From positions 1 to 44,243 of the forward strand of contig JAADVB010000159.1 in NCBI GenBank assembly GCA_023334545.1: a stretch of DNA of 44,243 nt, written 5' to 3'. A program made the position numbers and the translations under genes. This document shows positions 1 through 12,484 of the stretch, in pieces; positions within the stretch are counted from its first letter, which is position 1, and the number at the start of each line of letters is the position of its first letter. A model generated the notes under the pieces. That model saw only the letters and a program-made list of their open reading frames with translations. It had not been told where the DNA came from and ran no database searches. The DNA is from Salisapilia sapeloensis CBS 127946 (Eukaryota > Protista > Oomycota).

Positions 1-24
1 CTTGTGTTTCATCTTCCTTACAAG

Positions 25-226
25 TGCGGCAAACGCTGTAAACTTTAAAACTCAAGTCGAGCAAGGGGAGTGGGATAAAGTGGTCGCGGACGATGTGAAC
101 CCGACGGCTAAACCCGCGTCATCGCCTTCGGAGGAAAATCGTTTAAATTTAAATCCCTTGAATTTTATCCTCTATGGACCGCTGAATGAAAAACACAAGA
201 ATGATAAGAAGACATCGTGGTTTTAA
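25..226 (+). CDS. Possible terminal exon of a gene entering from the left edge (unknown product)
   Basis: Pyrimidine-rich tract ending in AG at 23-24 (ttcatcttccttacaag), followed by an open frame AANAVNFKTQVEQGEWDK...KKTSWF* ending at 226. No recognisable domain. Confidence 0.3.
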
Positions 227-705: not shown

Positions 706-3700
706 TCATGTAGTCCCTCTACCCTTCCTTTGCAGAAATATCCATTCCTTCTGGTTCCTCTCTCGGTACTCTGGGAAGCTTTGGAGAATCTCTTCGTACT
801 TTTCCACCGTCAAGCGCAGCATCGTACACGTTCCGAGCGCAACACATGTGGCCGTCCGAGGAATATCAAAGAGCAACGACTTCTCTCCGAGGAAGTCGCA
901 CCGGCCTCGAATAAACTCTACGGTTTTCTCTTCCATGTCTTCGTTTCCAGCAGCATCGTCCATATCATCCGCTTGAGTTTGTTTAGTTACGATTGCACTT
1001 ATTCGTCTCCTGTTCCTCACTCCTGATACTACCGACCCTGAGTTCATCTTACGCACTCTCTTCGTTATCCTCACAGACACAGCTCCGTTTTCGATGACGA
1101 ACAAACTCTTGCATGTTTCGCCTTGACGGATGATCACGTCGCCTTGAACATACAACTCCTGCTCAAACGCAGCTAAGACGGCTCGGATGAAACCTTCGTC
1201 GCAGTGGGAAAACAGTGGCATGCCTCTGATCAAGTCTCGTAGGACGAAAAACGTAACGTCCTGAGTTCCAGCCATCGTTAGTCCGCGAAGTTGTTCCGCC
1301 TCATTCATACCCTTACTCTGCTGCCAATGAACGGCAAAATAGAGGCGGAGTTGCTTCCAGATTTCCGCGTCGAAGTTGTGTCGCTGCAAGTAGCTTGCCA
1401 CCCGAGCGACGCGCTCCTCATAGTCTGCTCGTTGTCCGAGCTCAGCTTCGTATACTTGGAAGAAGCTACCGGATAGCATGCCGAAGAAACCGATCGACAA
1501 AATAATGATGATCGTTGTCACGAGAGTCTCAATACCATTCTTCGGGGCAATGTCTCCGTAGGAGATGGTCGTAATGGCTCCTAAGCTAAAGTGCAAGGAT
1601 CTTGTTATCCGTCCTGAAATCGGAACAGAGTAGACACCATCAATTCCTGATATCGGAGTGAACGATAGCATTCCTGGTGTCGTCAGCCATGACGAAATAT
1701 CAGGGTATTCACGTAGCACACGGAACGAGATACCATAAAAGATGCAGGCGATCCAGTAGGCACCAAGTAGAAACCCAAACACGCTATGAGTGAAAGCGAT
1801 CATTGTAGGCGATGACGACCAAATGCGCAGATCATAGACGAGTGACTGATGAACCCGATCACCTAGACTTCGCAAGTGGATGAATCGCAGCATCTTGTTC
1901 AGTCTCAGAACGGAAATGTAGTACCAGGTCGGTGTTGACAATGTCCAAGAATCATTTTTACTGGTTGGGGCTGTGATGTAGCCAAGCAATTCTAGAGGTA
2001 ATAGAGTGAATAGATCAACCAAGTAAGATCCTTTGTAAAAGTAATGATCTCTAATCTCTTCGCTGTTCGTGACAATCTCACCTCGATGCATAAACGAAAA
2101 GTAGCTGCGATGAAGAATAAAGTCGATAGCACAGAGGACATCACCGACATATTCGCAGGAAAACCATATAGTAGTTGCCAATGGGACTGATACTACCTCC
2201 AGTGCATCAAAATCGAAGCTAACTCGAAATGGAATAACAATGACATAGTAGATGCAGACGATAAGCATGATGGCATCCCAAAGCCGACGGAAAGTGGATT
2301 GGTCCACAGAAAATGTTGCAGATTCAGATTTATCGATCCATGAATCGTACGACGATAAGATAGCACTAGCTCTACGCTTTGTCTCCGGTTGATGTGTAAT
2401 CGCTGATGGTGTCGGCTGCTCGACTACAGGAGCCACAGCTCGCTTATTATTAAGCTTATTCTTTAAAAGTCTTTTTAATTGGAAAGTTGCCATCAGGGTT
2501 TTCAATCCGTTCTCCGAAGAGGCTTCGGTCTTTGCTTTGACCGACGGTGCGTTGGTGCCACTTTCTAAATTTCTAGCTGTCTTCGTGCGAGTAGCATCCA
2601 TTCTTAGTCTAAAATCACGAATACACTCGATATTTTGCGATCGACCAAGCGATGTTACTCGTATCCCCGTCAAGAAAGCATGAGTTTTTAAATCCGATTG
2701 TCTTTGCGTCCCTGCATCTATTGTCATTTTCGCTACTTCCTGAGCATATTTCTTTTCATTCTGTTCAACAGTTGACAGGCCTTGATCGTTTAGACTGGGT
2801 ACTATACTCATGCTAGCACGTCGCGATTCATCTCGTCTTAAGCTTGTAGAAGATAATGGGCGCTGTCCATTACCATTCATATTAGCTTGTCGGCTTACCT
2901 GCTCACCGTTGGCATGATTGTAATGTTCCAGTGATTTCAGCAATCGTAAGTTTTCTGCATGGCGTTGCCAAAGCATGCTCTTAGCTGTCATTCCTGCAGA
3001 TACTACTGTCAAAGATGCCCGCCGCCCCGTCGATACGATTGAATGGCGAAGACTTTCACGGAGACTACGCTGGACAGAGGGATACTTTTCGTTTTTACTT
3101 GCACTCGGTGATACTTTAGCTGTGTTCCTGATCTTTGTCATGAAGGACATTGCGCTATTAGCCGATTTTGGTGATGTAGCTCCTACCGCGGTGGTAGATC
3201 TGACAGCGTTTGATATTAAGGTCAGTGATGGTCCCCGTTTGATGCCTGCTTTTGTAGGCCCAGCCGAATTAAAACCACTTTGACCTTTATAGGACTCGAA
3301 CAGCATACGCTTAAGCTTGTTATTGGAGCGTGCGAAAGTCCTCGTTTGACCGGTCTTGCTGGTTTGATTAATAAGAGATCCTATCATGTCACCAACTCGT
3401 GATTTTGACCGATTTCGCTTGTAATCTGTTTGGCTTTCCTGCTTTTTACCACTTTTTATCTCTGTCTGTCGGTTCTGTTGAGATGATTGACTTTCAGGCT
3501 TTAGATTCTTCAAAACATTCGCGTAAACCCAAACAGTTCGTCGATATTTGCGCTTCATAGCTATCATTAATTGCATTTCCAGTGCATTACGAACTTTTGC
3601 TGGCCATAACGTATTCCACTTCTGTCGACTTAGCTCTAGTATTTGACAACTCCGAATCGCTCGTGCAGTTGCAAGATGCGTCGTACCATGGAGAAAGAAA

Positions 3701-6700
3701 GCGAGATCTCCTATCATTGCCCCTTCGTACACCGTAGCATACACCATGCCTGAATTTGCGGACATCATTTCTCCCTGACCATCTTTTATAAAGAAGAGTT
3801 TCGATCCTATTCGACCTTCTTGAAAGATAATGTCTTTCCGGAGATACAAGGTCATCTCAAGCGCGTTCACGATAGCTTCGAGTTGAGATCGAGAACAAGC
3901 ATCTTTTAACTCGGGTACTTGGGAGGGAATATCGACGTATAAACACTCGAAAAACTGTGCACGTAGTATATCAGGCAAATCGGCAAAGATAGCTCGAGCC
4001 TGCGTTTCAACCAAAGATCTGGCACTAAACTCGATTCCTTCCTGCGCTCTCTTCGTCAAATGTCCCGGCAGCGCTCGGCGCTTGGCGTATTCTTTGAAGT
4101 CGTTCATAAGTTCTGCTAGTATTTTTGCATCCTATTCAGAGACGTCAATGTTAGCATATCGATCATGCTTCGATGGCAAAGAGATTGCGTACGAGATCCA
4201 TTTTCTGCATAACCGTTGTCATTTCCATAATGACCTACACAAGAAAACAACATAGAATATCATCAATTGGAGCGAAAGGATAAGTTTGACAAAGCGGATA
4301 ATTTACCTGTCCGATAAATATCCATCCAAGCAAACAGATAAGACTACAAAAGATTGTCTCGATTGGATTCTGAGCGACGATATCTCCAAAACAGACGACC
4401 GTGAACTACATATGACAAGAATTACGCTACTGGGTATGGTTGTGTCGGATAGTATGGGAAGTTACCGTCTCAAGAGACCAATAGATGGACCGAAGATATG
4501 CTATGCCAACGTCATTCGGGTTTTCGTTCAAAACAGGGTCTATCGTCATCCAACTCCTCGTCGCATATCCACTTTGTACCGACAACCTTCCAATCAAGAA
4601 GAAGGCGCTTCCAATCTGGTGAGCTGCTGACAAGAAGAAAATGAGGAACCGGACGAGATCAAACATACTTAAAAAAACGAGGCTTTTGCTGAGGAACTTT
4701 TCTTGCAGCACATCCTCAACCCCACGCAGGAATTCGAGCAACTGAGGACTTTTGATCATACGTGGTAATCGGCCTACAGACCTCAAGAAGAATGACTCTC
4801 CGAGGTAATCCAATGGTAACAAGCTTGCTGCATCGTATCGTAGCCGTCGTGTCTTGTATCGGGCGCGAATAAGTGGCCGGTTTAAGACACTTCCATTACC
4901 AAATTGCTTGTATCCAATGTGATTCCAAGCTAGATAAGCGTCCAAGAGAAGAATGACATCACTTGCAATATCCGATACCACGAACATCGACTCCATTTCT
5001 TCTGACGGTTCATGCAAAAAAGCAAGCCTTATTGGCGTCATGTAAAAGTTATATGCTAGAACAAGGTACATGAGCCAAGACCAGACCTTCGCAGTCCAAC
5101 CGAATGGATCGAGGATATAGTCTGAAGTTTCGCCTAAAGCACTCTGCTGACGTGTCTTTACAAAGGGCGCGATGCCACTCAGTAGTCTGTTCGTCTTCCC
5201 CAGTACTTTAAACAACTTTTTCTTGGAAGTAAGATTACTTTTAATGCGAACGAGCATATTCTCGTCAAACGTACGCTGAAGCTCAATAGTTTCAACAACA
5301 GGCTTCATTTCTTCCGGAAACCGCTGCACCATAGTAAGAAATTCCTCCCGAGGCAGCACTATTATCCGTGCGTTCTCCACAGCTACGGCATTAAGTTCAT
5401 ATGTCACCGATTCCTTTGTTGCTAAGCTTTCTTCACCAAACCACTGGTGCTCGACCACTCGTCGAACTGGGAGCTGGCTAAGCCACTGCGATTCCAAAAG
5501 CTTTTCCTTGGCGGTACTTAAGCGCCTGAGTTGACGTAGACGAGATATCGTGCTTCCGGATCTTTCGCTTTTAACTAAAGGTGGTGAAGGTCTATTTTGC
5601 GGTGGATATGTAAAGGATACAGGAGACAACAATTGATCAGAATTTCGCTTTGATGGCTTGTTCTGCTGAGCAAGTTCGAGCTGTGTCGATAGTTCAACAA
5701 CTCCAGCTTGAACGACAAACATGTCACTCGCAAGGTGACCAGCGGACGTGATGGGCATGCCTTTTAGGTAGACTTCGCAATGGACACAAGTGGATAATTC
5801 AAAAAGCAGTATGTGACGCCTCGGTGCTTCATTGAACATAGCGCACCGACCGAGTAGCTCATAATAAAGGTTCTTTTGCACCTCCTTTCGTAGAGATTGA
5901 GGTAGTTGAGCTAATATTTCATCTTCATTGACGCAACTTCCATTGATCGTCCACTTGGCAGAGTAGTATCTCCCAATCATACCTGCCACATCAGATGGGA
6001 TGCTCCCAGACGACATTAACGCTCGGTTTATTTGGAGAAGACGGTCTTTCTTTAGTCTATTTAAGGCATTCCATTGTGCCAGAACACTTGATATGGCACC
6101 TGCGGCTGTGTAACAAAGCAGTGCCCCAATGTAGATCCAGATAAAAGCCAGTAAGCACTCTTCTTGTGTCAATGGTATAATGTCTCCATAACCGACGGTA
6201 GAGATCATGACGACACTCCAGTGCATTGCTCGAATAAATGGAGAATCGATTTGGTACACAAATTTATCCCGGATAAACCATGTGCAGTTGTTGTGAAGAC
6301 TTGCAAGCGCAAGGCATTCCGTGTTAATATCAGACAAACTTCCAAAAGATGCAAGCGAGCGAATGGCTTCCTGACCTTCAGGAGTGGCTGGAATGCCGTC
6401 AACATAGCCATCTCGATCCGACATGATGTAAAAGATGGCTCCAGCACCATTGAGTAAAATTAGACACAGAATAAATAAACGCAGAAGCAACCGTGTCGAT
6501 GCACCAAGTTTCTTCTCCACCATTATTCGACGGAGAGCAAATGGGAGCCGATTCGTTCTTAGTAGGCGAAATAGGCGAAACAAGCCCATGAATCGAATAA
6601 CTCTGTCCGACATACCAATTTTGTTGACAAAATCCCAGCAAAGGGCAATCGGTAGATGCGAGATAATGTCTAATATGTATCTGTCATTCTCCAAGTAGTG

Positions 6701-9269
6701 CTGAATAATAGCTTTCCGTTTGTAAATGAGGTTTTGCGATTGAGATGTTGATTGTGATGCATCGACCGAGCCATTCATCGACCGAACGAACCACAATGCT
6801 CGCAGAGCCCAGTTAACGTATGAAAACATCTCCACGAGAACTGTAAGGCACATTAAGACAAATGCAAGCGTACCTGGATTGTGCTGAGATGTGTTCGGAG
6901 TCCCAATCGGTGCGAAGAGGTTAAATCCACGAAGGAAAGCAATCTGGTAAGGTACTTCAATGGCAGTGTACAGCAGCGCGAGGCAGTCCAACAATCTCCA
7001 GGTAGTGGCAAACTTGGAGTTGGGGAACCGCCATGGATGCACACTTTTCAGAGCATTCATGCTATCCTGTTCTAGGTTCTCCATCAATTTTCGCAGCGCT
7101 AATCCTTGTTTGGCATTGCAGCTAACACTTCCTGCGTTCGATTTGTTGCTTTTATTCCTCCCTTTTCCCGACTTTGGTTTGCCAGCAACTACCTGACTGT
7201 CATGCTCGTCTCCGTTATTTGCTCGATAGTGTGCTCGAAGTCGAACCATGCTAGTACGAGGGAAGTACTTGCGTAACATAAGATCAAAATTGCGTTTGGA
7301 CATCCACCAGCACTCGCAAGCGGCCTCGGCGATGATCTGGGAAGTAGAATAAGTGTAGCTAAATAAAGCGTCTTCGCCGAAAGAGCTGCCTGCTAGCAAC
7401 TGAGCAACGAATTCCCCCTTTGAGCTTGTCACTCGAAGCTCACCCTTTGTTACCATAAGCAGACGCTGTATTGAACCAAGTGCAAGAGCTGTCTGTTTCG
7501 GGGAAAAGAAGTCAACTTCCATAGTGTCCATGACGACATGGAGGAATGGTCCTGATTGCTTGCGGAACATTGGCACCTACGAACAACTACAGTGAGCAAT
7601 TGCATGATAAATACGTTATGTAGTAACTAACTCGCTTAATGATATTGTACTTGATATGATTATTGCACTTGAGATGATAGCGAGCTGGTAAGTCGTCCAA
7701 AACACGTTTTTCATCAAAGCCCTGACGAGCTGTCTGAATATACTGAAAATAATACCGCACATGTGCCGCGATATCCTTTGGGACGTCTCGAGCTATCATG
7801 AACTGCCCAGACACTATTTTAAAAAAAATTGATCGAAGTTACCATCAAAGTCGTCTTACCTTTACAGATTGGTCAAGATGCGTGCTAACGCTTGAGCTGA
7901 GATTTGGATTGCGTCGACTGAAGTAGAACCCACATGCTGATAGCATAGCTGTCGTCCAAAGGCCACTGCATAGCTGGACAAATAAACAATACACTGTCTC
8001 GAGTTGGTTAGCTGGAACGAGATCCCCTTGACCAAGCGTGGTAATTGTCTTGGCAGCCCAGTAAATAGTTCGAATGTATTTGCGCCACGGAGAACCATAG
8101 TGAAGTTGGTCTTTAGTGACCCAAGATCCATGTATCGCATCGTCCGCATTGTTGCATATCGCAAAATCAATTCCGCATTCAAAGTGAGCGATAAACATAT
8201 ACCCACTCGCGGCGATATGACATAAGTAGATACCAATCCAAACAAGGTTGACAAGTAACGCCGTTGTGCTGAATGACATGGCATGCACCAATTTCGTTCC
8301 TCGGTAAGCCTGTAAGAAGCCTACGTGATAGAAGTATGGCAAAAAATGAGTTGCCATTACCAGGCGAAAGAATCCTGCGACGTGAGTCAAATTATATTCT
8401 TGCATGAGTATGAAGAGCAAATCGAACGGTACGCAGGAGAGAAAACTGCCTAGAACCACTTTCGTGCTCGGCTGTTGCATCGAACTACGGAGAGAAGTCC
8501 GTTGTTTCGCGACATTTAACGGCGCAGTAAACTGTCGTTTCGCAACTTCTTCATTCGACGAACGTCTGCCAATACTTGAGCGAACTCGACGCTCACTTGC
8601 AGGCTGGACTTTCCTTGACATGTTTCTCTTTGAGCTGAAAACAGAACGTACCAAGAACAGAGGATGGTTTTGCTGGTAACTTTGCAGTAAAATCACGAAG
8701 TTCCATACTCGGAATGGCCACAATAGTAACTCGATCGCAGTGAGTATGGAGACATCCATCGTAAAGTCTATCCTTGCTGCGTCTGATTGCCATGGATCAA
8801 AACCAAAACCGAGTCTACCAGGTACAACAACGAGTGAAACGATCGCGTCTATCAAGCCGCCAAAATACCGACGATCTTCCCACTTTCTACTTCTTTTATC
8901 TGCATCACTCTCTTTATCCTTCTTTTTTCCTTCTGCTTCCCCCTCCGGATTGATCGCATTGCTCTGTTTTCTCCTCTCCTTAAACTTGTCATACGGAAAG
9001 AAGAGCATGCGTGGGAATAGGGACACAGTTTTCTGCTTTCGAAGCTTATCGCCAAGACGCCAAGTCGAACCTTGCCTTCCCAATTTTAAGTTAACAAGGC
9101 CGAAACTTGCGTTTTCAACTGCATCATTTGCCTTTGCTTTTTCCTCCTGGATACCCCGAAGTGTTTCTTTCTGAGCAATTTGATCGGCATAAGCGTTTTG
9201 AGTATTGGCAAAATCACGTCGTGTCGGACCAGTGTCTCCGTTCGGGAAGTCCGCCATGCCACTCGACAT
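706..9269 (-). CDS. Four-repeat (4x 6TM-pore-C-linker-CNBD) cyclic-nucleotide-binding-domain cation channel, CNGK/tetraKCNG-like architecture, ~2752 aa, 6 exons
   Basis: Hand-spliced exons 9269-7860, 7802-7632, 7576-4466, 4405-4307, 4234-4193 and 4131-706 are joined by five GT-AG phase-0 introns (57, 55, 60, 72, 61 nt) into one open frame. Four pore loops: WAAKTITTLGQGDL, WSVVMISTVGYGDI, WSLET|FTVVCFGDI, FSLGAITTISYGDI. Each is followed by a C-linker and CNBD (SFGEDAL, WFGEESL, MIGDLAF, FLGEKSLLFDIPRTAT). S4-like segments include LFRLFRLLRTNR and VLRLNKMLRFIHLR. Confidence 0.9.
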
Positions 9270-9523: not shown

Positions 9524-12484
9524 TTACTCCACTTTCATCTCCCATGCCGCAGCGACTTTCATGCCCGGCTTGCGCACCACAGCAACGTCCTTGCTTTCAT
9601 CGTAAGTGACTTCCTTTTCCTCTCCGTTTACCACTGCTTTCTGTGGAATCTCTTTACCTGCCTGTCCCAGTCCGATGATTTCCACTCGCTCAATCCAGTT
9701 CTCAGCGTCGTACCCCACACGCTCAACGTTGCTGACCAAGCCACCGTCCCATCCGTACTTGACTACTGTGTACTCTTCCTTACTGATATGATCGAAGGAC
9801 GCTTCGTCATCGAGGTAGAGCACTCCTTCCGCCTTGCCGTCCTTGTCGACGCACACGACCAGCGTCAGCGGATCCTTGTGCATCAAGGACGCCGTCCGTC
9901 GCACTCGCTTCTTCGTCGGCAAAATACTACCACCTCGTTGGAAGACAGGAACATACTCTAGTGGTGCATCGACCTCTTGTTGTCCTCCTTCCAGCCGCTT
10001 GTAGCTGTCAAAGACATTGTACCAGACATCGTCAGTAGGGAGTTGGACAGTGGTCTTCCGCACGTTCTTCTCGACAATTGGTTTCATAAGCAAATCCTTT
10101 CCTAAGAGTACTTGATCCTCTACTTCAAACATATCTTGATACTCCATCCAGAGACTACGCAAGACTGGGAAGCCTGTCTTTTGATTCTCCCAGAACGTCG
10201 TGTAAATGTACGGCAGGAGCGAGTATCGGAAGCGAATCCAGTCGCGAAGAATGTCCGAGTACGGCTTATCCGCCAAATAAGGCTCTCGTCGAGCGGAATC
10301 GTGATGTGCATGGTTACGGAAGAATGGGTGGAACGTCGCGCTCTGGTGCCATCTGACCTGGAGCTCAGCTTCAGGTGACCCGAAGAACCCTCCGACGTCC
10401 GTCCCGACGAACGGAAGGCCGGCAGTGCTCAGAGATAGGAGCATCTTGGTGCCGTAGCTCAAGTGATCCCACTTGGCAGTATTGTCTCCCGTCCAGACAG
10501 CCCCGTAGCGTTGGGAGCCACTGAAGAAGGCTCGAGACAGGAGGAAGGGACGCTGGAGATCATCGGAGGAAGCGATGTATCCGCCCATAGTCATGTCAGC
10601 GTCTTCAATCTCATTTTGAGGTTTACGCAGTTGCCGAGTGATCTGACCGAGCACCGTCGCCATCTGCATGTAGATCCCATACATGTTATGCCACTCCCGA
10701 TGCTCGACGCCATCGAGAGACAGCATGTGCTTGGGCATAGACACTTCTGGTCCATTGAAGACGGACGGTTCGTTCATGTCGTTCCAAGTGAACAAGGACG
10801 GCGTGCTGCCAACGTACTTTTCGAAATTGAATAACGAAGCCCACCACTTTCGAGCTTTTGCGTTCGTAAAGTCGACGTAGGAGCTCGATCCAGGCCAGCA
10901 CCAGCCATCGAAAGCAGCGTCTTTCGATCCATCCAGGACGTACATACCTTTTCTTGCTGCTTCTTCATGGACAAAATAGTCTTTCTTCCCGTTCTTAATG
11001 TGTGGGTCGATGATCGTCACCATCTTCCGCTGGACACGGTTGACGTACTCTTGCATGCCGACAGGATCAGGGAACGCGTGGGGGTCCCACGTGAAGTACA
11101 TGCGTTCGATCAAGTGGTCAATGTCGAGCCATAGGACGTCACACGGAATGAGCTGTTCGTCGAACGTGTCGCTGACAGTCTTGATATCGTCTTCTCCCTT
11201 ATAGTTCCAACGAGACTGGTGGTAACCTAGAGAGAAGAGAGGTGGCAGATAAGGATACCCTGTGAGCTCAGCATACTGCCGATAGAAATCTCGAGAAGTA
11301 GGTCCGAGCAAAAGGAAGAGATCTAGTACGCCTGATTCACTACTAAAGAAAGCTGTCTTGTCTTCCTTGTCGGACGTGAAGAGGTCTACGAACGTCTCGG
11401 ACGGATTGTGGTGGAAGGCGCCGACGGTCGAATGGCCATTGGGAGCCACTAGCAGAGGGATACTGCCGTACAACGCCATGGGTTCATCTAGTTCGTACTC
11501 AAAGACATCTAGATTGTACAGTCGGTACGGATCGGTCGTTTGCTCGTATGCAGAGGACTCGGTGTTCCATTCGAGCGTGTCCTTGAGCAAGTAGTCTGTC
11601 GCGTGTTCTGGGATACCATATAGTTTCCGGTGGTTGTGGAAAGTAATGTCGAGACCGACGGACGACGGACCGAACTTTTTCACGTCCGTATGACCGCCAA
11701 ACTTTTCTTCCCACACGAGATCTTCCGTTGCGGGCGTCTTATCCGTTTCAGATGCGACTGACTTCTCTTGGATCGTCCCATCTTCGTAAATCGCTAGGCC
11801 GTCTTCACCGTAGTCGACAATCTTCTTGCCGTCATGAACGTCCGCCTCGACGGTAACCTCGGCAATATCCGCACTAGCTTCCTTCCTTTGGAGCAAACGA
11901 GGCTCAAAGTAAAAGTGGCTGTTGGAATTGGCAGACACGACTTTCTCCACCCCATTGTACACTTCAAAGACAAAGGACGCGAGGTACAGGACGACTGTGA
12001 TATCTGGATACGACTGGGGAGAGTATAGTCGGATTTCTTCATTCGGATTGAATCCTGCGATCGAAACCGACGATATATCTACTTCCTGGAGAGGGAAGCG
12101 AGTCAATGCAGGTTCCTGTAGCACATCCGGGTTCTCCCATCTCGTGCGAGGATCATTCGCATCGGCAAAGTCCTCCGTGACGTGCATACGTACGGCTGGC
12201 GTCTGGTCATGATGGTTCAAAACGAACGATAGCTGACCTTGCAGAGGCGTAGTGGAGTCAGGAGAGGTTAGATGGAAGGAAACGACATCGTCCGAGTGCT
12301 GGATCGAGTCTGCTTGGACTTGGTAGTTATGATACGGACGAGCCGACTGGTCGCTCGTAGCACGATGGACTCGGCAAAATGACGTTTGGTCGCAAGTACG
12401 GAACTTGCTCCTATCGACTGCATCTACTGCACTCAGTTGAAGCAAAAGGAGTGCGATCGGAAGCAACAGCGCCACCGCTCGCAT
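9524..12484 (-). CDS. GANAB: Glucosidase II alpha subunit (neutral alpha-glucosidase AB, GH31), 986 aa, intronless
   Basis: Signal peptide followed by AVDRSKFRTCDQTSFCRVHR, the typical GII-alpha N-terminus. Also YRLYNLDVFEY, GYHQSRWNY, catalytic nucleophile motif WNDMNEPSVFNGPE, acid/base motif VWTGDN, and FFRNHAHHDSARREP. Confidence 0.95.
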   Translation of the reverse strand: MRAVALLLPIALLLLQLSAVDAVDRSKFRTCDQTSFCRVHRATSDQSARPYHNYQVQADSIQHSDDVVSFHLTSPDSTTPLQGQLSFVLNHHDQTPAVRMHVTEDFADANDPRTRWENPDVLQEPALTRFPLQEVDISSVSIAGFNPNEEIRLYSPQSYPDITVVLYLASFVFEVYNGVEKVVSANSNSHFYFEPRLLQRKEASADIAEVTVEADVHDGKKIVDYGEDGLAIYEDGTIQEKSVASETDKTPATEDLVWEEKFGGHTDVKKFGPSSVGLDITFHNHRKLYGIPEHATDYLLKDTLEWNTESSAYEQTTDPYRLYNLDVFEYELDEPMALYGSIPLLVAPNGHSTVGAFHHNPSETFVDLFTSDKEDKTAFFSSESGVLDLFLLLGPTSRDFYRQYAELTGYPYLPPLFSLGYHQSRWNYKGEDDIKTVSDTFDEQLIPCDVLWLDIDHLIERMYFTWDPHAFPDPVGMQEYVNRVQRKMVTIIDPHIKNGKKDYFVHEEAARKGMYVLDGSKDAAFDGWCWPGSSSYVDFTNAKARKWWASLFNFEKYVGSTPSLFTWNDMNEPSVFNGPEVSMPKHMLSLDGVEHREWHNMYGIYMQMATVLGQITRQLRKPQNEIEDADMTMGGYIASSDDLQRPFLLSRAFFSGSQRYGAVWTGDNTAKWDHLSYGTKMLLSLSTAGLPFVGTDVGGFFGSPEAELQVRWHQSATFHPFFRNHAHHDSARREPYLADKPYSDILRDWIRFRYSLLPYIYTTFWENQKTGFPVLRSLWMEYQDMFEVEDQVLLGKDLLMKPIVEKNVRKTTVQLPTDDVWYNVFDSYKRLEGGQQEVDAPLEYVPVFQRGGSILPTKKRVRRTASLMHKDPLTLVVCVDKDGKAEGVLYLDDEASFDHISKEEYTVVKYGWDGGLVSNVERVGYDAENWIERVEIIGLGQAGKEIPQKAVVNGEEKEVTYDESKDVAVVRKPGMKVAAAWEMKVE

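What the first reader, a model, noticed from the sequence alone, without database searches (positions are those of the whole stretch)
1552..8042. Asymmetric selectivity filter: only one of four pore loops keeps GYG
Seen: the aligned filters are I TTLGQGD (8022-8042), II STVGYGD (6182-6202), III TVVCFGD (4382-4402, formed only after splicing) and IV TTISYGD (1552-1572). Established: the symmetric TxGYG signature underlies K+ selectivity, and changes at the first Gly or the aromatic position usually abolish it. Inference: concatenation let each quadrant diverge, giving a built-in heterotypic filter (GQG/GYG/CFG/SYG) with likely non-K+-selective or otherwise novel ion selectivity.
Basis: partly seen in the sequence, partly recalled or inferred. 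Interest (0 to 1): 0.8.

Follow-up and report, generated by a model that had tools for sequence, protein, structure and literature searches.

The report
Four-repeat oomycete channel, conserved lopsided pore
One oomycete gene encodes a complete four-part cyclic-nucleotide-type ion channel whose four pore loops all differ (GQG, GYG, CFG, SYG), and the same lopsided pattern is kept in distant relatives, so it is a working design of unknown ion preference, not decay.

Summary
On the minus strand, 706-9269, six exons and five 55-72 nt GT..AG introns give a 2752-aa protein. It has four 6TM + cyclic-nucleotide-binding repeats, with pore loops TTLGQGD, STVGYGD, TVVCFGD and TTISYGD at the stated coordinates.

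The third loop does need splicing. RNA contigs did not show that junction. However, the same intron position and the same downstream FTVVCFGD exon occur in two fetched relatives' loci, and ORF fragments from nine other assemblies break at that point.

Full-length oomycete orthologues (Lagenidium, Pythium brassicae, Phytophthora) are only 32-39% identical overall. They still keep GQG / G(Y/F)G / CFG / (S/C)YG, repeat by repeat.

A CFG third loop is also present in the deep stramenopile Platysulcus. Of 51 four-repeat relatives surveyed, 39 have at least one non-canonical loop.

The architecture resembles animal CNGK, but the all-GYG/GFG pore that defines CNGK is not met. The one survey found reports only two-repeat oomycete channels and lists neither odd motif.

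Reduced K+ selectivity is plausible by analogy (weaver GIRK2 GYG to SYG; HKT SGGG) but untested. Other notes of this scan on the same stretch agree.

The parts
706..9269 (-). Whole gene: six exons, 2752 aa, four 6TM + C-linker + CNBD repeats in one chain
   Evidence: ORFs, junction sequences, spliced model with no internal stop, Pfam Ion_trans / Ion_trans_2 / cNMP_binding
7860..9269 (-). Exon 1: N-terminus and repeat I S1-S6
7632..7802 (-). Exon 2: C-linker of repeat I (57 codons)
   Evidence: phase-0 GT..AG introns of 57 and 55 nt on either side
4466..7576 (-). Exon 3: CNBD I, repeat II with CNBD II, and repeat III S1 to the pore helix
4406..4465 (-). Intron 3 (60 nt, GTAAC..TAG, phase 0), lying between the pore helix and the filter of repeat III
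   Evidence: same position in relatives
4307..4405 (-). Exon 4 (33 codons): filter III and the first half of S6 III
4193..4234 (-). Exon 5 (14 codons): end of S6 III
706..4131 (-). Exon 6: C-linker and CNBD III, a long low-complexity linker, repeat IV and CNBD IV, stop codon
   Evidence: an RNA-library contig ends exactly at 4131
8022..8042 (-). Pore loop I, TTLGQGD (Gln at the aromatic position)
   Evidence: TLGQGD invariant in 11 full-length proteins
6182..6202 (-). Pore loop II, STVGYGD (the only canonical loop)
4382..4402 (-). Pore loop III, TVVCFGD (Cys for the first Gly, Val for the filter Thr)
1552..1572 (-). Pore loop IV, TTISYGD (Ser for the first Gly, the 'weaver' configuration)
6524..6604 (-). 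S4 of repeat II, the most highly charged (10 R+K in a 32-residue window, against 3, 6 and 5 in I, III and IV)
832..891 (-). Phosphate-binding cassette of CNBD IV, the only one with the canonical GE...PRTA arginine
   Evidence: alignment of the four repeats, coordinates

Best explanation
The gene encodes a pseudotetrameric CNBD-type cation channel. Four K-channel-like 6TM modules, each followed by a C-linker and a cyclic-nucleotide-binding domain, lie in one polypeptide and should fold around a single pore (shown: architecture; inferred: folding and conduction). Because the four quadrants are covalently fixed, each pore loop evolved on its own, and the result has been held by selection: I GQG, II GYG, III CFG, IV SYG. 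Two adjacent loops (III and IV) lack the first filter glycine, loop III also lacks the filter threonine, and loop I lacks the aromatic residue. The classical four-fold carbonyl cage for K+ therefore cannot form in full. The most likely outcome is a cation pore with weak or no K+ over Na+ discrimination, possibly with some divalent permeation. It would be gated mainly through the charged S4 of repeat II and the one canonical cyclic-nucleotide site in repeat IV (inference). A role in zoospore electrical or cyclic-nucleotide signalling is a guess from the biology of CNGK in sperm.
For: The peptides and the gene model are confirmed. Domains: Pfam. The nearest solved relatives are CNGA1/CNGB1, LliK, SthK, HCN and KAT1, at E 1e-20 to 1e-13. 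Full-length four-repeat orthologues of 2440-2901 aa exist in Lagenidium, Pythium brassicae and Phytophthora, with repeat-specific filters I (T/V)TLGQGD, II (mostly S/T)-V-G(Y/F)GD, III mostly FTV(V/D)CFGD, IV ITTV(S/C)YGD. The same pattern and the same intron occur in loci L001 and L002. Repeats group by position, not by species. Overall identity is 32-39% with 8.6% invariant residues, yet the filters are nearly invariant. The neighbouring glucosidase II gene lies on the same contig as the channel genes in Lagenidium and P. brassicae, which supports orthology. A transcript-derived complete 2900-aa ORF from Platysulcus shows that four-repeat mRNAs exist and already carry CFG in loop III. For the selectivity inference: GIRK2 weaver GYG to SYG loses K+ selectivity (PMC9001731), and HKT SGGG versus GGGG differ in Na+/K+ transport (PMC7918770).
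Against: No electrophysiology exists. Selectivity cannot be read from sequence: HCN has GYG yet is weakly selective, as noted in PMC7576140. RNA evidence in this organism is thin. Depth is 3-5 across the exons, the intron 3 region is seen unspliced, and the only joint there is GT..AG on the opposite strand. Expression and sense splicing are therefore not shown directly. The weaver and HKT analogies change all four loops or a different scaffold, not one loop of a CNBD channel. A full-length structure could not be modelled because of the 1200-aa limit.
Confidence: 0.6

Rival explanations
1. The channel is still K+-selective. Loop II and the backbone carbonyls of the other loops, together with the retained pore helices and the GD ring, would preserve enough of the K+ sites. 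The odd residues would then tune conductance, rectification or block rather than selectivity.
For: All four loops keep the pore-helix pattern and the terminal G-D. Loops I and II keep the first glycine. GFG and GLG at the aromatic position are tolerated in known K+ channels (own knowledge). CNGK, the nearest architecture, is K+-selective, and pore-loop Thr/Val changes there alter rectification only (PMC4749565).
Against: Two loops lack the first glycine. In GIRK2 that substitution abolishes K+ selectivity. Loop III also replaces the filter threonine with valine. Gln at the aromatic position has no precedent known to me.
Confidence: 0.2
2. The central pore does not conduct. The protein would work as a voltage or cyclic-nucleotide sensor, or conduct through a voltage-sensor domain as HCNL1 does for protons.
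For: HCNL1 is a CNBD-family channel that conducts protons through its VSD (PMC11700363, abstract). More degenerate relatives exist in Saprolegniales, for example Achlya VVVGYGF / VTIQFGS / SSFDYID / TSQSLGD.
Against: The filters are among the most conserved stretches of the protein. That is expected if ions pass there and hard to explain for a dead pore. S5, the pore helix and S6 are intact in all four repeats.
Confidence: 0.12
3. Decaying gene or annotation artefact. Either the odd loops are drift in a pseudogene, or the locus is really two or more genes and loop III is never assembled.
For: RNA contigs show no sense-strand splice at intron 3, and depth is low. The published oomycete tandem CNBD channels are two-repeat (PMC7576140).
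Against: A 2752-codon frame runs without a stop through five clean phase-0 GT..AG introns. One uninterrupted exon joins CNBD I, repeat II and repeat III. The identical filters and intron position recur in many species. Orthologues are annotated at full length.
Confidence: 0.04

Closest known systems
CNGK / tetraKCNG, the cyclic-nucleotide-gated K+ channel of sea urchin and zebrafish sperm and of choanoflagellates
   Same: Four 6TM-CNBD repeats in one chain. There are signs of a 1-to-2-to-4 duplication history: I with III and II with IV, the pattern reported for CNGK in PMC7576140. The binding domains are functionally unequal. ApCNGK is gated by one cGMP at repeat 3 (PMC4749565); here only CNBD IV has a canonical cassette.
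   Different: CNGK carries GYG or GFG in all four loops and is K+-selective. Here only one loop is canonical. CNGK is reported only from animals and choanoflagellates, whereas this family is in stramenopiles. Common descent with CNGK was not tested because no CNGK sequence could be fetched.
[quoted passage not shown] 2020, PMC7576140)
   Same: Same superfamily, same organisms, and the same idea of internal concatenation with repeat-specific evolution.
   Different: Those have two repeats with TVGYG-like filters. The paper's supplementary files contain neither TLGQG nor VCFG. This protein has four repeats and three non-canonical loops.
Plant HKT and bacterial Trk/Ktr four-loop-per-subunit transporters
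   Same: Four K-channel-type P-loops in one chain, where one loop's Gly-to-Ser change (SGGG versus GGGG) goes with Na+ rather than K+ transport (PMC7918770). This is the best precedent for a selectivity code of one residue per quadrant.
   Different: HKT has no S1-S4 voltage-sensor modules, no CNBDs, and only one conserved glycine per loop. It is not homologous at the level of the whole repeat.
GIRK2 weaver mutant (G156S, GYG to SYG)
   Same: The same substitution as natural loop IV. It causes loss of K+ selectivity (PMC9001731).
   Different: It is a pathological mutation present in all mutant subunits of a Kir channel, not a conserved state of one quadrant of a CNBD channel.
Native heteromeric CNG channels (CNGA1:CNGB1) and four-domain Nav/Cav/NALCN
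   Same: Working pores built from non-identical quadrants. CNGA1/CNGB1 are the top solved sequence matches.
   Different: CNG filters lack the GYG-type loop: metazoan CNG has TIGE. Nav/Cav have no CNBDs and use side-chain rings (DEKA, EEEE), which are absent here.

Membership tests
CNBD-containing voltage-gated-like channel superfamily (HCN/CNG/KCNH/KAT type) | 6TM Ion_trans module followed by a C-linker and a cyclic-nucleotide-binding domain | tested here: met
   Pfam Ion_trans, Ion_trans_2 and cNMP_binding in all pieces. phmmer matches to CNGA1/B1, LliK, SthK, HCN and KAT1 at E 1e-20 to 1e-13.
CNGK / tetraKCNG | Four 6TM-CNBD repeats in a single polypeptide | tested here: met
   Gene model of 2752 aa with four pore loops and four CNBD-like regions.
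CNGK / tetraKCNG | Canonical GYG or GFG K+ motif in every repeat (PMC4749565) | tested here: not met
   GQG, GYG, CFG, SYG.
CNGK / tetraKCNG | Falls inside the metazoan and choanoflagellate CNGK clade, repeat by repeat | not tested
   No CNGK sequence could be obtained through the tools. All-GYG four-repeat hits turned out to be intronless metagenome ORFs of unknown protists.
CNGK / tetraKCNG | K+-selective current opened by cGMP | not testable with these tools
   Needs electrophysiology.
K+-selective channel (TxGYG signature in four-fold symmetry) | T-x-G-[YF]-G in all four pore-lining loops | tested here: not met
   Only loop II qualifies.
Oomycete two-repeat tandem CNBD channels (PMC7576140) | Two 6TM-CNBD repeats per chain with TVGYG-like filters | tested here: not met
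   Four repeats here. Motifs TLGQG and VCFG are absent from that paper's data.
Oomycete GQG-type four-repeat CNBD channel group (defined here: the A/B paralogue groups) | Repeat-specific loops I TLGQGD, II VG(Y/F)GD, III C(F)GD, IV (S/C)YGD, and position-specific clades | tested here: met
   The window protein sits in group A with Lagenidium P0005 and P0153, P. brassicae P0151 and P0154.
Four-domain Nav/Cav/NALCN | Side-chain selectivity ring (DEKA, EEEE, EEKE) and no CNBDs | tested here: not met
   The loops are of K-channel type with a GD ending, and each repeat carries a CNBD.

The most novel reading that the evidence does not exclude
Oomycetes, and stramenopiles more widely, carry an undescribed class of pseudotetrameric CNBD channels. 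In these a K+-channel filter has been converted, under selection, into a fixed asymmetric filter with one defining residue per quadrant: G/G/C/S at the first-glycine level and Q/Y/F/Y at the aromatic level. That could give a selectivity not seen in symmetric channels, such as Na+- or Ca2+-permeable or otherwise unusual. It would be a living intermediate of the route by which symmetric pores became Nav/Cav-like asymmetric ones, and a target absent from plant and animal hosts.
Probability: 0.35. Interest if true: 0.85.

Novelty: new variant of a known kind. Interest (0 to 1): 0.66.

Why it matters
Ion-channel biophysics has studied asymmetric K+-type filters mostly through artificial concatemers and disease mutants. 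Here nature supplies a conserved one, and relatives give graded variants. Examples are Platysulcus GFG/GYG/CFG/GYG, oomycete group B with an Asp in loop III and Cys in loop IV, and a third oomycete group with GY(Y/D)D / GYG / GSRE / (F/W)(F/Y)GD. This makes it directly testable how many canonical loops a pore needs for K+ selectivity and what the odd loops add.

It also extends the four-repeat CNBD architecture, so far described for animals and choanoflagellates, to stramenopiles. It suggests that published counts of 'two-repeat' oomycete channels miss a larger class. Oomycetes include major crop and fish pathogens whose zoospores rely on ionic signalling, so a channel type absent from their hosts is of practical interest.

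Tried and rejected
1. Direct cDNA support for the exon 3/4 junction. Only three small RNA-library runs of this organism exist. Their contigs cover the gene patchily at depth 3-5, cross intron 3 unspliced, and show one joint that is GT..AG on the opposite strand. This is not decisive, so I relied on comparative evidence.

2. AlphaFold model of the pore. This was not run. The tool takes at most 1200 aa of unaltered sequence, and the four pore modules span 2752 aa. A single repeat would say nothing about the heterotypic filter.

3. Placing animal CNGK in the repeat tree. No CNGK sequence could be fetched. The word-indexed search with the Platysulcus protein returned only itself and one Allomyces protein. 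The all-GYG four-repeat hits are unnamed metagenome ORFs.

4. Pseudogene or decay reading. Rejected on the intact frame and on conservation.

5. Close relatives of the window's own species. None found. The best channel hit is 39% identical and the best glucosidase II hit 55%.

6. The ESM Atlas look-up gave only generic CNBD-channel clusters.
Full report
**Observation**

Translating the minus strand at the four stated intervals gives TTLGQGD (8022-8042), STVGYGD (6182-6202), TVVCFGD (4382-4402) and TTISYGD (1552-1572). The region holds three very long minus-strand ORFs: 7845-9269, 4427-7576 and 706-4107. Pfam finds Ion_trans, Ion_trans_2 and cNMP_binding in them.

**Gene model**

Reading the gaps between the ORFs gives five short introns of 57, 55, 60, 72 and 61 nt. 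All are GT..AG and all phase 0. Joining exons 9269-7860, 7802-7632, 7576-4466, 4405-4307, 4234-4193 and 4131-706 yields one 8259-nt frame of 2752 codons without an internal stop.

The protein is four times [S1-S6, C-linker, CNBD]. One uninterrupted exon runs from CNBD I through repeat II into repeat III, and another from CNBD III through repeat IV. The four repeats therefore cannot be separate genes unless there are internal promoters.

**The spliced third loop**

The long ORF ends ...IAYLRSIYWSLET and is followed by GTAAC. After 60 nt...TGTAG is followed by FTVVCFGDIVAQ..., which is a normal filter plus S6.

Direct RNA proof was not obtained. The only three RNA-library runs of this organism cover the gene at word depth 3-5. 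They contain contigs that cross intron 3 unspliced (4256-4448 and 4422-4513). Their only joint there skips 4434-4484, which is GT..AG on the plus strand, that is, antisense to the channel. One contig ends exactly at 4131, the acceptor of intron 5, which is suggestive only.

The comparative evidence is strong:
- ORF fragments from nine other assemblies all run ...YWCL(E/S)T and then V plus unrelated residues. This is what a GT donor at the same codon boundary produces.
- Two fetched loci, L001 and L002, show the pore helix, a gap of about 60 nt and then FTVVCFGD.
- Annotated orthologues read LETFTVVCFGD.

**Who has it**

An exhaustive profile-free search with the 1049-aa middle piece found 4682 relatives. 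The best are only 30-39% identical. Named ones are oomycetes: Lagenidium giganteum, Nothophytophthora, Phytophthora cinnamomi and Globisporangium ultimum. A second search added full-length proteins of 2440-2901 aa from Pythium brassicae and several Phytophthora species.

The neighbouring gene at 9524-12484 is glucosidase II alpha. It is 50-55% identical to Pythium, Lagenidium and Phytophthora, and 47-49% identical to Saprolegniales and Albugo. The window therefore comes from an oomycete without a close sequenced relative.

In Lagenidium the glucosidase gene (N0F65_010404) lies on the same contig as the channel genes (N0F65_010407, 010391, 010392). The same holds in P. brassicae (008092 against 008098 and 008099). 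This supports orthology.

**Conservation of the asymmetry**

Scanning all fetched proteins with the pore HMM and the two loci gives the following for the oomycete orthologues.

| Loop | Sequence in oomycete orthologues |
|---|---|
| I | (T/V)TLGQGD in every one |
| II | V-G(Y/F)GD, usually preceded by S or T |
| III | FTV(V/D)CFGD, with single exceptions (FTLVCNGD, FTADCFGD) and a few broken gene models |
| IV | ITTV(S/C)YGD |

Two paralogue groups appear.
- Group A has V-CFG in loop III and SYG in loop IV. It holds the window, P0005, P0153, P0151, P0154, L001 and L002.
- Group B has D-CFG in loop III and CYG in loop IV. It holds P0155 to P0158, P0004 and P0002.
- The two groups sit side by side in relatives.

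Against ten full-length orthologues the window protein is 32-39% identical, and only 8.6% of its residues are invariant in all eleven. Yet TLGQGD of loop I is wholly invariant. In loop II everything from V to GD is invariant except Y/F. Loop III keeps FT, the C and the GD invariant, with the F nearly so. Loop IV keeps ITT and YGD invariant.

**Origin of the repeats**

A maximum-likelihood tree was built from 102 S5-P-S6 segments: 24 four-repeat proteins cut into repeats, plus six single-repeat channels.
- Each window repeat falls inside an 11-member oomycete clade of the same repeat number, with SH-aLRT 99, 99, 99 and 97.
- Each of these lies inside a 19-member position-specific clade that also holds Platysulcus tardus, a deep-branching stramenopile, and unnamed protists.
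- The deepest split is (II+IV) against (I+III), with support 90.
- The concatenation is therefore old, consistent with two rounds of duplication, and each quadrant has since evolved separately.

The alignment has few columns (138), so the deep nodes are soft.

Platysulcus has GFG/GYG/CFG/GYG. The Cys in loop III thus predates the oomycetes, and the losses in loops I and IV came later.

A third oomycete group (Phytophthora lilii, Albugo candida, Pythium oligandrum) has GY(Y/D)D-like / GYG / GSRE-like / (F/W)(F/Y)GD. Again only loop II is canonical.

Of 51 cluster representatives with four detectable loops, 12 are canonical in all four and 39 are not. Loop III is the one most often altered.

**Other asymmetries**

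The four repeats are only 18-23% identical to each other. R+K counts in a 32-residue window at S4 are 3, 10, 6 and 5 for repeats I to IV. Only CNBD IV has the canonical GE...PR(T/S)A cassette. This agrees with other notes of this scan on the same stretch.

**How it probably works**

- **Shown:** the architecture and the conserved heterotypic loops.
- **Established knowledge:** the K+ filter needs the first glycine's unusual backbone conformation in all four subunits.
- **Precedents:** GIRK2 weaver (G156S, GYG to SYG) loses K+ selectivity (PMC9001731). In four-loop HKT transporters, Ser in place of Gly in one loop goes with Na+ transport (PMC7918770).
- **Inferred:** with Cys and Ser at that position in adjacent loops III and IV, Val for the filter Thr in III and Gln for the aromatic in I, the pore likely keeps fewer K+ sites. 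It would then be a weakly selective cation pathway, opened through the charged S4 of repeat II and the single good cyclic-nucleotide site.

As PMC7576140 stresses, selectivity cannot be read from sequence. I give this reading about 0.6.

The rivals are:
- retained K+ selectivity (0.2);
- a silent central pore with sensing or voltage-sensor conduction, as in HCNL1 (PMC11700363; 0.12);
- artefact or decay (0.04).

**Comparison with what is known**

The nearest described system is CNGK. It has four 6TM-CNBD repeats, GYG or GFG in all loops, is K+-selective, and is gated by one cGMP at repeat 3 (PMC4749565). It is reported from animals and choanoflagellates.

The broad survey PMC7576140 reports only two-repeat tandem CNBD channels in oomycetes, with TVGYG-like filters. 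Its supplementary files contain neither TLGQG nor VCFG. Further full-text searches found no description of four-repeat CNBD channels in stramenopiles.

The proteins do exist in databases, as hypothetical proteins. I therefore class this as a new variant of a known kind: CNGK-like in build, but failing CNGK's defining pore feature. Whether it shares ancestry with CNGK was not tested.

**Limits**

- There is no functional data.
- Expression in this organism is barely detectable.
- The full-length structure was not modelled.
- Organism names are missing for most metagenomic relatives.

Noticed in passing
window 4434-4484 (+ strand): An RNA-library contig joins 4432/4433 to 4484/4485, skipping 51 nt that read GT..AG on the plus strand, antisense to the channel gene. 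In the channel's frame it would create a stop. Two other contigs begin exactly at 4484. This may be a spliced antisense transcript over the pore-loop III exon junction.
   Followed up: partly
L001 8542-11062; L002 13257-15120 and its minus strand: In relatives a second four-repeat channel gene (TTLGQGD first loop) follows the first in tandem. Lagenidium (N0F65_010391/010392) and P. brassicae (008098/008099) also have adjacent paralogues. The window is cut about 700 nt beyond the gene's 3' end, so a tandem partner here cannot be seen.
   Followed up: partly
proteins P0024, P0029, P0037, P0040, P0042, P0058 (Phytophthora lilii, Pythium oligandrum, Albugo candida): A third oomycete four-repeat group has loops GY(Y/D)D-like / GYG / GSRE-like / (F/W)(F/Y)GD. 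A bulky aromatic residue replaces the first filter glycine in loop IV, and again only loop II is canonical.
   Followed up: partly
proteins P0019 (Aphanomyces stellatus), P0028 (Achlya hypogyna): The saprolegnian four-repeat relatives have even more degenerate loops, for example VVVGYGF / VTIQFGS / SSFDYID / TSQSLGD. These are candidates for non-conducting or very different pores.
   Followed up: no
window 832-891, 3652-3714, 5375-5440, 7322-7381: Only the fourth CNBD keeps the canonical phosphate-binding-cassette arginine. CNBD II and CNBD IV carry long inserts before the cassette.
   Followed up: partly
window 1-145: A much more highly expressed neighbour (word depth 27-46 against 3-5 for the channel) ends at a splice-like break at 145 in all three RNA runs.
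   Followed up: no
literature, PMC7576140: The 'two-repeat' oomycete CNBD channels in that survey came from RefSeq gene models. Several database models of the present family are clearly truncated (P0009 at 1589 aa, P0012 at 2217 aa, P0015 at 1487 aa), so some two-repeat reports may be halves of four-repeat genes.
   Followed up: no
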